A DNA stretch of 64,000 nt from contig NW_026262581.1 of the NCBI RefSeq assembly GCF_021869535.1, positions 51,770,001-51,834,000 on the forward strand. The letters are read 5' to 3'. The first letter of the stretch is position 1, and every line of letters starts with the position of its first letter. This DNA comes from Mytilus californianus. Lineage: Eukaryota. Both the position numbers and the translations under genes were made by a program. Of the stretch, positions 32,422 through 39,903 are shown one piece after another. The notes under the pieces were generated by a model. It worked only from the letters and a program-made list of their open reading frames with translations, did no database searches and was not told the origin of the DNA.

Positions 32422-33853
32422 TTTGTTTTCTGAAGACGACAGGGGGCGTTTCGTTCGAGAACGGAAACTATTTAAAAATACAGCCCGATTAATTCAGTAC
32501 GTCCCTCCACGTATTAATAATCGATCTCTCCTACTTGCGAAGGTAATGAAGAAGTCATAGATATAACGACTGAATTATTCGGATAAAAAGATATAAGGAG
32601 ATGTGGTAATAAACCGTATGATTGCCAATGAGACAACTATCCACCAAAGTCAAAGTTTAAATTAAGTCGATTTAAATAGGCAACGAACGCGGCCTTAAAC
32701 AATGAGAAAACCCACACCATTTAGTCGGCTATAAGAGGCTACATCATTACTGGAAAACCCAGCCATTTTATTCTGACTGAGGGGGAAGGGCTGACAGATA
32801 TATATATTAATGTACATGCCTACTGAACTTTTTTTGGTCAAAACGGGCTTAGGAATCCCCCCAACCCCAACCCCCGACCCACCCCTTCTTAGCCTGGCAA
32901 CTCATTCTAATACTTCGTCGATCGGATCGTAAATTAACAGTTGATTCACGATGTTAATCAAAAACGTTTGTATTATATAAGATAACTTTTTCGAAATTTG
33001 CATTTCATATGAAATAAAAAATAATTTGCAATGAATTCGTAACAATATAAATATTTCCCGCCATTTGAGAAGAAAAAATGACGCTATCCCACGATGCATC
33101 ATTCTAATATCCAATGGACGAAACCATGTTGTTGTATTCCACCTGGCAATACTGTCGAGCAGTGAGCCAGGATCACAGGCTACCACTCCTCACAGTTTGC
33201 CACCATTTTGCTCTCCAAAATGATCGGCCTGACAGACCCCCCCCCCCCCCCCAAAAAAAAAAACCCCAACCCCAAATCATGTGCAAAGATTTTCATGGAG
33301 AAATAAAATGATTGCGAACAGCTTGGTTTCTGTGGGGTCTTCTCACAGTAGAAGTACTTTTGGAGACAGATTAAAATAAGCAATGTTGCTTGTTTCTGGA
33401 TCCCATTGTTTATACAGTATTATATTATATAGCATGATTTGACTTATCGAATAAAATATTGTTTAAACGAAGTACTTTTCAAAAAATAATTCTCGCCGGC
33501 AGGAATTCTTTTAACACCATTGTTGGCGCCTCTCCTGTCCGAAAAAGTTTTACATAGAATTAGAAGACATAACATCTAACTGATTGCTGATATTTTGCTC
33601 TCTAAAATGAGCTGTCATAATATTATATGAAGATTTTCATGTAGAAATAAAATTAGGGTAAGCAGATTGGCCGCAAGAATTGCTTCTGTCATGCAAATGG
33701 CGAGATGGCGAAATATTCTCTCTGACCAGTTAAAGGGGTAGGGTACGTGTCACTTTGGTTAAAAGTGGGTATAGGTGTGTAATAAAAAAGAAATAGTTTC
33801 ATAGTTTTACGATTATGGTCATTGGCAAAATATCCAGAGGGGACACCACCAGG

Positions 33854-34109
33854 AAATCACACCATTATACTCCTGGTATATGTCATGTCTCGTCGATCCA
33901 GTAATCATTCTAGATCTGTATCTGTATCTGTAGGAATACCTTGTGTATACCAATACTGGATTTAATACAAAAGTAGAGATTGCGCCGTCGATTTATTGAC
34001 TGTTCACGAGAGCAGTTTCTGTGCGCACTACAGTGTCTTCAAGGTGGTTCCACTCGATTACTGTTTTTACGAAAAATGAGTTATAGTATTGCGGTATTTT
34101 TCTGGTTGG
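33854..34109 (+). repeat. 256-bp target duplication, left copy
   Basis: Identical by eye to 39648-39903. Confidence 0.95.
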
Positions 34110-34860
34110 TTTAAACAATCAGTACAAATTTGAAATAGAGAGGCTTAATAAAGAAAACCAATCGCTGCGTGATGGCATGGATGCGTTAGAACAATACAGT
34201 CGACGGGACTTAATTCGTATCAACGGCATTCCTGACGGTGGTATAGATGAATCTTCCATTCAAACAAACGAGTTAGTCAAAGATCTTATCAAAACCATCG
34301 ATGAACAACTAACACCCGAAGACATCATTCGATCTCATAGAATTGGTAAACCACGCACAAGGGAAGGCAATGAAGACGGCCGAGTTAACAACAAGTTTCA
34401 GCCTCCTAGACAAATAATTGTCAAGATTAAGGATCATAATGTTAAAAAGAGGATCCTCAGATGCAGAAAATTCTTAAAAGGGAAAATAGAATACAAGTAC
34501 GTCAGAATGAATGAGGACCTGACCAAGCCGAGAAACGCCATTGCATACAAAGCCAGACAGCTCAGCATTGAGCATCATCTAAGAGACACGTGGACAGTTG
34601 ATGGGAAAATTTATGTAAAGGACAATCAAATGCAAGTCCATGTTGTCAACACAATGCCAGCGTTCCTACGTTTTGTATCGATATACTGCTGTCCTGGTTC
34701 CATGGACTTCCTTGATAGGCTAGAATACAACAACAAACAAAACAGACGCGAGTACACACCACCACAACTCATAACATATGCGGAAGCACGAGCGAAGGAA
34801 TTAGCAGAGAGAGCATCTTCAAATGCATCAGCTGAAAACACGAGTGTCCAAATTTCATGA
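34110..34860 (+). CDS. LINE ORF1 (coiled coil plus RRM/CTD type), N-terminally truncated
   Basis: The frame is open from the junction (LNNQYKFEIERLNKENQSLRDGMDALEQYSRRDLIRINGIPD...RSHRIGK...IIVK...NEDLTK...WTVDGKIYVK), a typical invertebrate CR1/L1-type ORF1. Confidence 0.8.
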
Positions 34861-35742
34861 TTTAACTTTGAATAAAACTGCATATATTGACAACATTTTT
34901 TTTTTGTGTACGTATTTCTACATGTATTCAGACTATTTGACAGTCCTGTTTCAGAATTTTTTGCTTTTTTTTGTATTGTTTATTTATTTGTTTATTTTTC
35001 TATAATTACATGCTACACAATTCTTGTACATAATACATCTAATTTGTAATTCATCCAAATTCCTGTTAATTACACGGGAATACTTACCTTGATCGCTGAT
35101 TTGTCACGTGACAAATTTTAACGTATTGAAGTTCACAACACAAACTCTCATAGTAAAATAAATTACTCATGCGTGAAAAAGGTAAAACTATAACGGTTGT
35201 TTTTACATGATGTTAAAATCCATGGTAAGGAAATTTTCATGGCTAACTTCAAGCTCCTAAAACAACTTTAAAAAAGAAGATATTACTTTCAATTTGTAAA
35301 TTTTATCGTATACAAGCAATCTTTAAACAAAACGTACAGCGATTTGTACTGTTTAAAACGTGCATGCTTACTATAAATGGTAAATTGTATGGACAGATCT
35401 TGTCAATTCAGCGATCAAATAATCAATCAGGCAATATTAAATCGAGTTGATTTGACACGGCTGGTATTAACAGTTGTACTGAATTACTACGTAGATAAAG
35501 TTGTATCATTTATACATGTGTATACTCATTCCTCCAAACTACTTGTTCAATCCATGTACATGTGCATACTTTTTCTTTTGCTTCATGCATATAACATATT
35601 GTTATTCAATTTTTGTTCTCACAATTTTTTCTTATTTTTTACTTACACTTTTTTCACAAAACAAACGAAATGCTATGGATTATTTAACTTTGTATACGGC
35701 CGCTCTCAGTTTGACCAATTTCAGCCAGATGTAACATAACTC

Positions 35743-38700
35743 ATGGGGGTAGGAATCGAGTTATATCGTATGAGAGTTGGCCAATACTCACCAGGCAAAA
35801 ACATCAAACAAAGACTAAATTATATTGATTTTATCTGTATCAACTTATTTCTCGCTTGTAAAAGTGTCTCGCAGGCACTGGTGTTATCAATTTTAATCTT
35901 CACGTTGTCGCATCAACTAGGCGTGTGCCCTAAACCTTCAGAGATGAAACATGTAGACTCAAATGTACAAAAAACAACAAGTGTAAATGTGAATCTTAGA
36001 CTATTTATTATTTCATTTTTACTATTTGTTATACAAATTTTGCTAATCCTAGCAGGAATAGAGGTAAATCCAGGTCCAAGTGACGATATCGATTCTTCTC
36101 AAAGTTCAATTAACTCAACTGACATGTCGGATTTCAGTGAACTTTTCTCAAAATCAGTCTCAATTCTTCACTTAAATGTACAAAGCCTAGCCCCGAAAAT
36201 AGATCTGATTCAAGCTGAATATTCTGATTTCGACATTTTAGCGTTTAGTGAAACCTGGTTAAACAATAATCATACAGACGAATCAATTGAAATCCTAAAT
36301 TACCAGCACCCCTTCCGTCGTGACAGAGGTCAACACAAGGTTGGAGGGGGGATAATTGTTTATGTAAAAAATAATATACATGTTCAACGTCGAAGTGACC
36401 TCGAAAGCGAAAGTTTGGAAGCAATATGGTTAGAACTTAAAAGATAAAAAGGCTTTGCTCGGAACCTTTTATATACCTCCTAATAGTGGATCAGATATCT
36501 GGGAAAAAATTGAATATTGAGTTATTCTCTTGATATGGCGTCTAATGATAATACTATTAATTACATAATGGCCACTGGTGATTTTAACGATAACCAACTA
36601 GCCCCTGTTAATTCAAAAATTACACCTTTGTTAAGCCAATTTAGTCTTACTCAAATGATAGACGAACCTACTCATTTTACTGAATCGTCGTCATCATTGT
36701 TAGACCTTTTTATAACAAACGATGCTCACATAATAACATACTGTGGAGTCGGACCACCTTTATTAGACCAAATACGTTTTCACTGTCCTATTATTAGTCT
36801 TTTGAACTTTCCAAAATGTCGTCAAAAAACTTTTAAGCGAAAAATTTGGCTATATGATCGAGGAGATTATGACAGATATCGTAACATTTTATCTGAAAAA
36901 AATTGGGATTCCGTAATAAACTTAAATAACGTTGAACAATTTACAACCGAAATAACAAAAACTATCATAGAAGCTGCTGAAAAATGTATTCCAAATAAAA
37001 TAATAATTGTTCGTAAAAATGAACCTCCATGGCTAACAAATGATGTTAAAAAAATGATAAGGAAAAAAAATAGAATCCACAGAAAGGCTAAAAAATATAA
37101 TAACCAATCGGATTGGTCAAAATTTAAGAAAATACGAAATGAAGTTACCAGTTTAATAAGAAAATCAAAGGATGATTATAACAACAATTTAATTAAAAAA
37201 ATCATGAACAGTAACCCGTCCACTACTAATTGGTGGAAAACGGTCAAACAAATATCCGGATTAAAAACAAACGACGCAAGTATACCTCCATTAATGGTTA
37301 ATAACAACTTAATATTTGATGAAATCGAAAAGGCAAATGAATTTAATCGATTTTTTTCTTCCCAGTCAAATATTGATGATTCAAGTGCTATGTTACCTGA
37401 AGAACTTCATACTATTAGTGATGACATTAGTTATATAGAACTTACGGTTACTGAAGTTGAAGATATATTGAAAATTGTTAATCCCACAAAAGCTTCTGGC
37501 CCAGACCTCATAAGTCCCAAATTGTTAAAAGAAGCATCTTCTGTTTTGAAGTATCCACTATGTAAGCTATTTAACTTATCGTTAAGTACGTCTACTTTTC
37601 CAGATCAATGGAAAAGAGCAAATGTTACCCCAGTTTATAAAAATAGTAAACCGAATGACGTTAAAAACTATAGACCTATTTCCTTGTTGAGTGTAATTTC
37701 AAAGTGTATGGAACGTTGTGTATATAAACATGTTTACAATCACTTTAAGCGTAATAATATTTTAACGAAAAATCAGTCAGGCTTTACACGGGGGGATTCA
37801 GCGGTTAATCAATTAATTAACATTTCAAATGATTTTGGGAAGGCTTTAGATAGCGGTAAAGAAATAAGGGTAGTATTCTGTGATATAAGTAAAGCGTTTG
37901 ATCGAGTCTGGCATAAGGGACTGCTATTTAAACTTCAACAAGCGGGCATATCGGGTTCTTTACTAAGGTGGTTTGAAAATTATCTTACAAATAGAGTCCA
38001 GCGGGTGGTTATTAACGGTTCAAGTTCCGAATGGTTACCTGTAAATGCAGGCGTCCCACAAGGGTCCATTCTGGGCCCTCTCCTTTTTTTGATATTTATA
38101 AACGATATAATAGAAGACATTCAAGCTCAAATTAAGCTATTCGCAGATGACACTTCATTGTATATTATGGTTGACAATCCAACAGAAACAGCTACAATTT
38201 TAAATAACGATCTAGATAAGATTTATAATTGGTAAAAAAAATGGCTTGTGAATTTTAATGCCCAAAAAACTGAAAGTATGATAATTTCAAAAAAAATAAA
38301 TAGACCCTTTCATCCTCCATTAAATATGAATACCCAAGAGCTACAAACAGTAAGTAAACACAAACATCTAGGTGTCTTTTTTTCTAACAACGGATCCTGG
38401 AACGACCATATTGAATACATAGTTTCTAAATCTTATAAAAGAATAAATATAATGAGAAAAATGAAAAATGTTCTTGATAGGTTTACACTTGAAAAAATTT
38501 ACATATCATTTGTTCGCCCAATTCTTGAATATGCCGATGTCGTTTGGGACTCTCAAAATCAGAATTTGATTGCTAAACTTGAAAATATTCAGCTTGACGC
38601 AGCGCGTATCGTCACGGGGGGTACTAAACTTACCAGTATAAACAATTTATATGTTGAAACTCGATGGGAAAAATTATCTGAAAGACGACGCAATCATAGA

Positions 38701-39300
38701 TTAATTCATTATCACAAAATTTTGAATAATAAAACCCCAGAGTATTTAAGAGACTTATTGCCCGATTCAGTAGGAAGTAGGCATGATCATAATACAAGAC
38801 AAAGAAATAATATTACACAAGTCAATACTCGGACCCGTTTATATTCTGAATATTTCATCCCAGCAACAACAAAACTATGGAACACTCTTAACTTAAACAT
38901 AAGAAAATGTGAATCTCTATCATTATTCAAAAAACAAATTAGTACCCAAAATTGTAAGGTCCCAGCGTATTATTATATAGGACATCGTTTTGGTCAAATT
39001 CTTCATGCTCGCTTAAGAATGGATTCAAGTTCATTGAATTCTCACTTATTCGTTCGTAATTTGGTAGACTCTCCAAATTGTCGTTGTGGTGATGTAGAAA
39101 CAAATTCTCACTTCCTGTTATCTTGTCCCATATACACTGATTTAAGACATGAACTATTAGATTCTGTTTCAGTTCTTCCTGTCCAAGTTAACACAAAAAC
39201 TTTGCTTTTTGGATCAACGGTACTCTCGGATGAGCAAAATAGTCTTTTATTTAGTTTGGTGCAGAAATATATTATTAAAAGTAAACGTTTTAACCCTTGA
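35743..39300 (+). pseudogene. LINE ORF2 (AP endonuclease, reverse transcriptase, CCHC knuckle), disrupted
   Basis: APE motifs HLNVQSL, FSETWL, GDFN; RT motifs YRPISLL, DISKAFD, QGSILGP, LFADD; C-terminal CRCGDVETNSHFLLSC. Two compensating frameshifts at about 36443 and 36513, and an in-frame TAA at 38233-38235. Confidence 0.92.
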
Positions 39301-39647
39301 TGTTAATGCTTCATCATTCAATAGAAACCCAAGCATTTCACACCGTATAGATTACAATAATTCATGTTTATTTATTTTTTTTTATTTTTTTTTTTTTTTT
39401 TTTTTTTTTCTCATTAATTTTTTTTTTTTTTTCTTCATCTTCTTCTTCTTTCACCTTTTTTCATATTGATATATTTATTACAGAGCATGCCAGTATTTAT
39501 ATTTATGTATTGTCCAATAAGTGTATTATTTTTTGTAAAAGGAGACAGATTTGTAAAAGCAAATTGCTTGTTTCTGAATCCTTAATATTATTTCATTTGT
39601 ATAATATCGTTTAATGTTGATTTATCTGAATAAATATTGTTTAAACC

Positions 39648-39903
39648 AAATCACACCATTATACTCCTGGTATATGTCATGTCTCGTCGATCCAGTAATC
39701 ATTCTAGATCTGTATCTGTATCTGTAGGAATACCTTGTGTATACCAATACTGGATTTAATACAAAAGTAGAGATTGCGCCGTCGATTTATTGACTGTTCA
39801 CGAGAGCAGTTTCTGTGCGCACTACAGTGTCTTCAAGGTGGTTCCACTCGATTACTGTTTTTACGAAAAATGAGTTATAGTATTGCGGTATTTTTCTGGT
39901 TGG
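39648..39903 (+). repeat. 256-bp target duplication, right copy
   Basis: Identical by eye to 33854-34109; continues seamlessly into the older LINE. Confidence 0.95.

What the first reader, a model, noticed from the sequence alone, without database searches (positions are those of the whole stretch)
34106..39649. The LINE's 5' junction is the exact reverse complement of its 3' junction (14 bp): a fold-back self-priming model
Seen: 5' junction TTGGTTTAAACAAT (34106-34119) and 3' junction ATTGTTTAAACCAA (39636-39649). Ten of these bases are ORF1 coding sequence exactly at the truncation point, and four (TTGG) end the duplicated target. Inference: the nascent cDNA reached an ORF1 site complementary to its own 5' start, looped back, and gained CCAA. 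It then used that microhomology to join the target 256 bp away. This would explain both the truncation position and the very long TSD, and predicts a truncation hotspot in this family.
Basis: partly seen in the sequence, partly recalled or inferred. Interest (0 to 1): 0.7.

Follow-up and report, generated by a model that had tools for sequence, protein, structure and literature searches.

The report
Inverted LINE tail at 5' junction
A young, 5'-truncated mussel LINE carries at its 5' junction an 8-base filler that is an inverted copy of the element's own 3' tip, between 250-256-bp target duplications; this is best read as a second, aborted priming event on the opposite DNA strand, a rare variant of a known kind of LINE insertion and not a fold-back at an ORF1 motif.

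Summary
The 14-nt perfect inverted match (34106-34119 / 39636-39649) and the perfect 256-nt direct repeat are real and are not chance.

1. Full-length family copies, and reads from other individuals, read ...CACAATAG|ATCAG at this ORF1 position. Only AT (34118-34119) is therefore LINE sequence. TTTAAACA (34110-34117) is an 8-nt filler.
2. CCAA was not gained. All 15 copies of this subfamily end in the same ...AAACCAA, and 112 sister copies end in ...AAACTAA.

The junction is target TTGG, then a filler copied from the element's own 3' terminus in inverted orientation, then LINE, with 4-nt and 2-nt overlaps. Paralogues of the host repeat show a single-copy 256-bp target that already contained GTTGG|AATC. 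Ten other copies have 6-12-bp TSDs and no filler.

Best reading (about 0.5): two independent nicks about 250 bp apart on opposite strands each primed on the LINE RNA 3' end. The top-strand event aborted after 8-10 nt, and its product annealed to the first cDNA. This is the unique-tail counterpart of the L1 5' poly(T) "twin/dual priming" loci. A cDNA snap-back using only 2 nt of homology gives the same product and is not excluded.

Family 5' ends do cluster here (5 of 9 within 53 nt), but the cause is unexplained. Ordinary-to-moderate interest.

The parts
33854..34109 (+). 5' copy of the target-site duplication. The unambiguous core is 250 nt; the first 2 nt (AA) overlap the LINE terminus and the last 4 nt (TTGG) overlap the inverted terminus.
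   Evidence: D1, 256/256 identical to 39648-39903. Paralogues of the host repeat have this stretch once, colinear with the reconstructed empty site.
34106..34109 (+). TTGG. This is the target-derived 3' end of the nicked top strand and is complementary to the LINE RNA terminal CCAA. The nick may lie anywhere within these 4 nt, for example TT|GG.
   Evidence: Present in all four paralogues at the same place. Also present at the end of the 3' TSD copy, 39900-39903.
34110..34117 (+). 8-nt filler TTTAAACA, an inverted copy of LINE positions 39638-39645. It is absent from the target and from ORF1 of the family.
   Evidence: The 14-nt inverted identity is, pair I16.
34118..34119 (+). AT, a 2-nt overlap shared by the inverted terminus and the first LINE bases.
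   Evidence: Family copies read ...AATAG|ATCAG here. Contigs break at 34118.
34118..39649 (+). 5'-truncated LINE, 5532 nt, lacking about 690 nt of a roughly 6.2-kb full-length element. It is 98-100% identical to its closest siblings over the stretches compared.
34118..34860 (+). Remnant of ORF1. The family ORF1 start codon lies about 320 nt upstream in full-length copies.
   Evidence: No Pfam hit.
35740..39300 (+). ORF2 frame with an endonuclease (weak hit), a reverse transcriptase and a C-terminal Cys/His motif. It is broken by in-frame stops at 36445, 36481, 36484, 36511 and 38233.
   Evidence: (PF00078 E=5.7e-31; PF03372 E=2.9e-4, below the curated cut-off).
39636..39649 (+). Canonical 3' terminus of the family, ...ATTGTTTAAACCAA, with no poly(A). 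It is the template of the filler, either as RNA or as the 5' start of the cDNA.
   Evidence: 30 copies; 15 exact copies; 112 copies of the ...AAACTAA sister form.
39648..39903 (+). 3' copy of the target-site duplication.
   Evidence: D1.

Best explanation
What it is (shown, about 0.9): a recent insertion of a 5'-truncated, non-poly(A), endonuclease/RT LINE into a copy of another repeat. It is flanked by a 250-256-bp target duplication. The 5' junction reads target TTGG, then 8 nt copied in inverted orientation from the element's own 3' terminus, then LINE from ATCAG.

How it arose (inferred, about 0.5):
1. The two DNA strands were nicked about 250 bp apart by two independent first-strand-type cuts, not by the usual coupled second cut 6-12 bp away.
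2. At the bottom-strand nick (...ATTT|CC), normal target-primed reverse transcription made a 5.5-kb cDNA.
3. At the top-strand nick (...GGTT|GG or ...TTGG|), the 3' end paired with the terminal AA or CCAA of a LINE RNA, either the same RNA re-used or a second one. The reverse transcriptase copied only 8-10 nt (TTTAAACA[AT]) before aborting.
4. The 3'-terminal AT of this short product annealed to the 3'-terminal AT of the long cDNA. Each strand was then extended on the other, and strand displacement through the 250-bp interval produced the long TSD.

This is the unique-tail equivalent of the 'twin priming variant / dual priming' proposed for L1 copies that carry a 5' poly(T).
For: - The filler with its overlaps equals the last 14 nt of the element and stops exactly at the element's final base. 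That is what a template ending there, the RNA, would give.
- The terminus is canonical for the family, so it is the natural initiation site.
- TTGG pre-existed in the target and can pair with the terminal CCAA.
- If the nick is read as TT|GG, it has the same TT-3'/AA pairing as the first-strand sites in the ten other copies with readable TSDs, all of whose TSDs start with AA.
- Those ten copies have 6-12-bp TSDs and no filler. The only filler sits in the only long-TSD copy, as expected if the distant nick was an independent priming site.
- The terminal 14 nt occur once per RNA and are present in both orientations. Classical twin priming, with one RNA primed at two different sites, cannot give this. 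Sequential re-use or a second RNA is needed.
- There is published precedent: L1 loci with a 5' inverted tail inside TSDs, and the 'dual priming' model (PMC2837659). TSDs over 100 bp have been attributed to use of a distal unrelated nick (PMC5223499).
- Second hint: in L044 the target ends in GTTTAAA (shown by its paralogues) and joins the LINE at CAAT. This recreates 11 nt of the inverted terminus, 20 nt from the window's truncation point. In 59 loci that 11-mer occurs only at LINE 3' ends and at these two 5' junctions.
Against: - There is a single unambiguous case.
- The final sequence is identical under a cDNA snap-back model, and sequence alone cannot tell which strand was copied or which polymerase did it.
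- The TT| reading of the top-strand nick is one of five possible positions within the 4-nt overlap.
- L044 has no filler and no long TSD, so it supports bridging by the terminus only weakly.
- No longer inverted tails turned up. Among 115 listed 3' ends, none lie in opposite orientation within 7 kb of each other.
- The junction was not seen in other individuals' data, so it rests on this assembly alone.
Confidence: 0.5

Rival explanations
1. cDNA snap-back. The 3' end of the first-strand cDNA (...GAT-3') folded back on its own 5' start, paired through AT only, and copied 12 nt (TGTTTAAACCAA). Its new CCAA-3' end then annealed to a top-strand end ...TTGG-3' about 250 bp away.
For: It gives exactly the observed sequence, including both overlaps. 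Self-annealing of 3' overhangs at LINE-generated ends has been proposed for L1-associated inversions (10.1101/2024.12.14.628481).
Against: - The supposed 10-nt complementarity does not exist in the family; only 2 nt are shared.
- The best complementary site, 36259-36286, was not used here, and no 5' ends pile up there.
- Copying would have had to stop exactly at the cDNA/target boundary, although that template continues into target DNA.
- The model needs the RNA removed from the cDNA 5' start while synthesis is 5.5 kb away.
- It leaves the distant top-strand break and the long TSD unexplained.
Confidence: 0.25
2. Templated insertion by a host end-joining polymerase (polymerase-theta-type microhomology-mediated joining). 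After a distant top-strand break, a host enzyme extended ...TTGG on the CCAA-ending RNA or cDNA end for a few bases. It then re-annealed at AT and completed the joint.
For: Short templated fillers flanked by 2-4-nt microhomologies are the usual footprint of such joining (general knowledge, not tested here). The 8-mer filler also occurs at four other places within 7.5 kb, so short local templates are plentiful.
Against: Only the element's terminus explains all 14 nt. Copying starts at the very last base of the element, which is the natural start site of the element's own reverse transcriptase. No other copy in the family shows fillers.
Confidence: 0.15
3. Coincidence or artefact. Either random filler bases happen to match the terminus, or the 256-bp repeat and the junction are assembly errors, or two separate events occurred (a 10-nt inverted mini-insertion followed by a LINE).
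For: The DNA is AT-rich and the core GTTTAAAC is a palindrome. The junction was not found in contigs of other runs.
Against: - The 14-mer has probability about 6.5e-8 per position.
- The filler is absent from the 3' TSD copy, so it arose with or after the duplication.
- The reconstructed empty site is colinear with paralogues in a single alignment of about 1.24 kb at 91.6% identity.
- The runs laid were low-coverage contigs of other individuals, so absence there proves nothing.
Confidence: 0.04

Closest known systems
L1 insertions with a 5' poly(T): twin-priming variants and 'dual priming' (Meyer et al. 2010, PMC2837659)
   Same: A 5'-truncated LINE inside TSDs carries the reverse complement of its own 3' tail at its 5' end. 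There is microhomology between the target and the tail on that side. [quoted passage not shown]
   Different: Here the tail is a unique 14-nt sequence, not a homopolymer. The inverted piece can therefore be mapped to the very last bases of the element, and one long tail offering two priming sites is excluded. The TSD here is 250-256 bp, and the internal junction has 2 nt of microhomology (the L1 set had none). The clade is a non-poly(A) mollusc LINE, and there is a single locus against 39.
Classical twin priming (5'-inverted L1; Ostertag and Kazazian 2001; from my own knowledge and as summarised in PMC2837659)
   Same: Both nicked strands act as primers, the two cDNAs join by microhomology, and TSDs are retained.
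   Different: In twin priming the inverted part comes from a region of the RNA upstream of the sense part, with an internal deletion. Here the inverted part duplicates the terminal bases that the sense part also contains.
Unusually long L1 TSDs (>100 bp; under 10% of events in HeLa and frequent in repair-deficient cells; PMC5223499, citing Gilbert 2002/2005 and Symer 2002)
   Same: A distal, unrelated second nick is used to complete the insertion, giving a TSD of hundreds of bp.
   Different: Those reports give no evidence that the distal nick itself primed on the LINE RNA. Here the inverted terminus suggests that it did.
Microhomology-mediated 5' end attachment, extra nucleotides at LINE 5' junctions, and template jumping by R2 reverse transcriptase (from my own knowledge; not checked in a paper here)
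   Same: Short overlaps of 2-4 nt at the 5' joint; the polymerase switches templates at the ends.
   Different: An end-to-end jump onto a second RNA would give a head-to-tail, not an inverted, arrangement. Ordinary extra nucleotides are untemplated, or are not copies of the element's own terminus.

Membership tests
APE-type non-LTR retrotransposon (LINE) | Reverse transcriptase domain | tested here: met
   PF00078, E=5.7e-31, 108 bits against a cut-off of 29.6.
APE-type non-LTR retrotransposon (LINE) | Apurinic-type endonuclease domain N-terminal to the RT | tested here: inconclusive
   PF03372, E=2.9e-4, 21.1 bits, below the 24.5-bit cut-off. Only the first 88 profile positions match, because this copy is broken by stops at 36445-36513.
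APE-type non-LTR retrotransposon (LINE) | Many copies share one 3' end, have variable 5' truncation, and are flanked by TSDs | tested here: met
   127 exact 3' termini. 5' ends are scattered from full length down to 192 nt. Ten copies have 6-12-bp TSDs.
   No poly(A) and a C-x-C...H...C motif are seen. No phylogeny or named homologue search was run.
Classical twin priming | The inverted 5' part comes from RNA upstream of the sense part, with an internal deletion | tested here: not met
   The inverted 8-14 nt duplicate the last bases of the element, and these are also present in the sense part.
5' inverted-tail loci (twin-priming variant / dual priming) | The reverse complement of the element's 3' tail lies directly 5' of a truncated sense copy, inside TSDs | tested here: met
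   (I16, D1).
5' inverted-tail loci (twin-priming variant / dual priming) | The target next to the inverted tail looks like a first-strand priming site and pairs with the tail | tested here: inconclusive
   There is a 4-nt TTGG/CCAA overlap. The nick can be read as TT|GG, like the TT|N sites of ten other copies, but the family's site preference is too weak to test.
   Family copies read CACAATAG where the window reads TTTAAACA; 2 nt are shared. The duplex scan puts the best site at 36259-36286.
   Each junction word is unique in the genome. The predicted ACAAT-annealed junction is absent. No pile-up at 36259-36267. A cluster of plain truncations does exist nearby.

The most novel reading that the evidence does not exclude
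The locus is a sequence-resolved footprint of true two-sided ('dual') target-primed reverse transcription. The LINE machinery nicked both strands independently and initiated on an RNA 3' terminus at each nick. Because the tail is unique sequence, the same terminal bases must have been copied twice, either from two RNAs (perhaps held together by the self-complementary GUUUAAAC terminus) or from one RNA re-used after an aborted start. In poly(A) LINEs this cannot be separated from twin priming within a long tail.
Probability: 0.3. Interest if true: 0.55.

Novelty: new member of a known kind. Interest (0 to 1): 0.35.

Why it matters
How the 5' end of a LINE is joined, and where the second nick comes from, are the least understood steps of LINE integration. 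In L1 the homopolymer tail hides what happens at the second strand. Here the tail is unique sequence, so the junction shows that the element's last 8-14 bases were copied a second time, in the opposite direction, at a break about 250 bp from the first nick. If this recurs in population data, mussel LINEs would give a natural system for separating dual priming, snap-back synthesis and host end joining. They would also help explain very long TSDs, which duplicate host sequence. As it stands this is one well-resolved locus plus one weaker hint, so the value is mainly as a lead.

Tried and rejected
Later genome-search runs gave no loci either. The survey of 5' junctions therefore stayed at about 25 copies already held.
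- My first degenerate pattern was badly designed. It could match neither the window's junction nor L044's, and it only tested the predicted TTTAAACAAT+AGATCAGTAC joint (0 matches; the other hits were at control level).
- L027 first looked like a second long TSD. Inspection showed a roughly 95-nt tandem repeat in the target and an ordinary AACCCC(GC) TSD, so it was rejected.
- L044 first looked like a second filler case. Paralogues of its host repeat show that GTTTAAA is target sequence. It was downgraded to a junction whose two sides together recreate 11 nt of the inverted terminus.
- L039's apparent truncation is an internal 42-bp deletion.
- RNA duplex scan of the 3' tail against the element: the hotspot is not a preferred partner.
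- Folding of the last 90 nt gave no significant structure (z = +0.66). A sliding fold of the 5' 2.2 kb showed nothing striking 5' of the hotspot.
- Contigs of four public runs confirmed the family sequence at 34118. They showed neither the junction nor a clear empty allele, so they are uninformative on polymorphism.
- The clade was not determined; no homologue search or tree was run.


Full report
**1. Observation**

The flanking direct repeat is 256 nt and 100% identical, at 33854-34109 and 39648-39903 (D1). The 14-mer has a probability of about 6.5e-8 per position under the window's dinucleotide composition. Allowing one mismatch, 0.29 matches are expected in the whole 64-kb window. Three were found: the two junctions and the tail of an older LINE fragment at 33458-33471. 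The core GTTTAAAC is a palindrome, but only the inverted reading matches 14 of 14. The identity ends at the element's last base, because the next base outward differs.

**2. What the element is**

- The insert carries an ORF1 remnant. Its ORF2 frame has a weak endonuclease hit, a clear reverse transcriptase (PF00078, E=5.7e-31) and a C-terminal Cys/His motif.
- ORF2 is broken by in-frame stops at 36445-36513 and at 38233.
- The genome is 1.65 Gb.
- The family has one fixed 3' end and no poly(A). Fifteen copies end in the same 24-mer ...AAACCAA. 112 copies end in the sister form ...AAACTAA. In 30 aligned 3' ends, flanks diverge immediately after the terminal AA in nearly all.
- CCAA is therefore the canonical terminus, not something gained at this locus.
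- Full-length copies start about 690 nt upstream of the window's 5' end, with the ORF1 start codon about 320 nt upstream. The window copy is a 5532-nt truncated copy of an element of about 6.2 kb, and it is 98-100% identical to its siblings.

**3. The 5' junction**

- Six close full-length copies and seven more diverged ones read ...CAAAGCCACAATAG|ATCAGTAC. The window reads ...CTGGTTGGTTTAAACA|ATCAGTAC.
- Independently, contigs from three other sequencing runs follow the window copy down to 34118 and then continue with ...CACAATAG (table 7).
- LINE homology thus begins at 34118.
- The reconstructed empty site (left flank, one repeat copy, right flank) aligns as a single colinear block of about 1.24 kb with paralogues of the host repeat. 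All four aligned paralogues read GTTGG|AATC at the right boundary.
- The junction therefore has three parts: target ...TTGG, an 8-nt filler TTTAAACA found in neither the target nor ORF1, and LINE from ATCAG.
- The filler plus 4 nt of target and 2 nt of LINE equals the inverted terminal 14 nt of the element.

**4. The rest of the family**

- Ten copies with readable junctions have 6-12-bp TSDs that begin with the AA shared with the element's end, and they have no filler: L004, L006, L009, L011, L016, L017, L019, L027, L028 and L038/L007.
- Two copies show no TSD (L008, L040/L002).
- The window's 250-256-bp TSD and its filler are thus both unique in the sample, and they occur together.
- L044, from a subfamily about 85% identical, has GTTTAAACAAT at its 5' junction. 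However, paralogues of its host repeat show that GTTTAAA belongs to the target. It has no filler and no long TSD.
- Even so, target end plus LINE start recreate 11 nt of the inverted terminus. In 59 loci that 11-mer occurs only at LINE 3' ends and at these two 5' junctions. This hints that the terminus can bridge the top-strand end and the cDNA end.

**5. Hotspot prediction**

- Nine family 5' ends were mapped between the full-length start and about 2 kb further in.
- Five of them lie in 53 nt of ORF1: L044, the window, L043, L038 and L040. About 0.24 would be expected if they were uniformly spread.
- Excluding the window copy, which seeded the search, four still lie within 32 nt of it.
- A cluster therefore exists. 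But three of the five are plain junctions, and both special junction words are unique in the genome. The joint predicted from annealing at ORF1's ACAAT has no match.
- The internal site that truly pairs best with the 3' tail is 36259-36286 (28 nt, 82%). It shows no pile-up of 5' ends.
- Local RNA folding gives no obvious block. The cause of the cluster is unexplained.

**6. Mechanism**

The top-strand 3' end left of the insert ends in ...GGTTGG. The element's RNA ends in ...CCAA.

- *Proposed course.* The simplest course is that this end paired with the RNA terminus and a reverse transcriptase copied 8-10 nt. With a nick at TT|GG, the pairing is the same TT/AA pairing as at ordinary first-strand sites of the family. 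The product's terminal AT then paired with the terminal AT of the 5.5-kb cDNA made from the bottom-strand nick about 250 bp away, and both strands were completed on each other.
- *What this accounts for.* It explains the start of the inverted piece at the element's last base, both overlaps, and the coincidence of the filler with the long TSD. The distant nick would be an independent priming site rather than the usual coupled second cut.
- *Exclusion of classical twin priming.* The terminal 14 nt occur once per RNA yet appear in both orientations. Classical twin priming is therefore excluded, and either two RNAs or sequential re-use of one RNA is required.
- *Precedent.* This matches the 'dual priming' or tail-priming variants proposed for 39 primate L1 loci with a 5' poly(T) (PMC2837659). 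It also matches the idea that very long TSDs come from a distal unrelated nick (PMC5223499).
- *Steps shown:* the anatomy of the junction, the canonical terminus, the single-copy target, and the family norms.
- *Steps inferred:* the order of events, which strand was the template, and which polymerase acted.

**7. Rivals**

- A snap-back of the first cDNA on its own 5' start, using 2 nt of homology, gives the same sequence and cannot be excluded.
- A host end-joining polymerase could have made the same short copy.
- Chance or artefact is unlikely. However, the junction was not recovered from other individuals' low-coverage contigs, so it rests on this assembly.

**8. Verdict**

The locus is a clean non-poly(A) example of a known but rarely documented type of aberrant LINE integration. 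It is of moderate interest as a lead for population-scale or biochemical tests.

Noticed in passing
window 36055-36078: A 2A-like ribosome-skipping motif (GIEVNPGP) lies in the ORF2 frame just upstream of the endonuclease, after a hydrophobic stretch. Such motifs are described for APE-type non-LTR elements of invertebrates (PMC3708506).
   Followed up: partly
family ORF1, equivalent to window about 34098-34150 (L032-based positions 1481-1533): Five of nine mapped family 5' ends fall in 53 nt of ORF1. There is no obvious RNA structure and no complementarity to the 3' tail. The cause is unknown; RNA 5' ends or RT pausing are possibilities.
   Followed up: partly
L044:1474-1484 (G000:C121:56495197-56495207): The 5' junction of a diverged copy recreates 11 nt of the inverted 3' terminus from 7 nt of target (GTTTAAA, present in the host-repeat paralogues L061-L064) plus CAAT of ORF1. 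There is no filler and no long TSD.
   Followed up: yes
window 33286-33471: This is an older 3' fragment of a related LINE, about 80% identical over the tail, ending ...ATTGTTTAAACGAA. Paralogues of the host repeat begin to align exactly at its end (33469/70). The host repeat's boundary therefore coincides with a LINE tail.
   Followed up: no
window 36445-36513 and 38233-38235: The ORF2 frame of this very young copy (TSD 256/256 identical) already carries five in-frame stops. Contig depth from other individuals dips at 36390-36589. The copy was probably defective when inserted, either mobilised in trans or miscopied.
   Followed up: partly
window 36259-36286 versus 39617-39644: A 28-nt internal stretch in ORF2, beginning TTAAACAAT, is 82% complementary to the 3' tail. 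It is the best RNA-RNA partner of the tail in the whole element. No 5' ends pile up there.
   Followed up: yes
window 39365-39435: A long T-rich tract in the 3' UTR has variable length between copies. Many 3' UTR alignments restart just after it, at about 39414.
   Followed up: no
L040 / L002 (G000:C24:10154850 and 10160345) and L008: Two young copies have no detectable TSD. This suggests target deletion or another aberrant 5' joining in the same family.
   Followed up: partly
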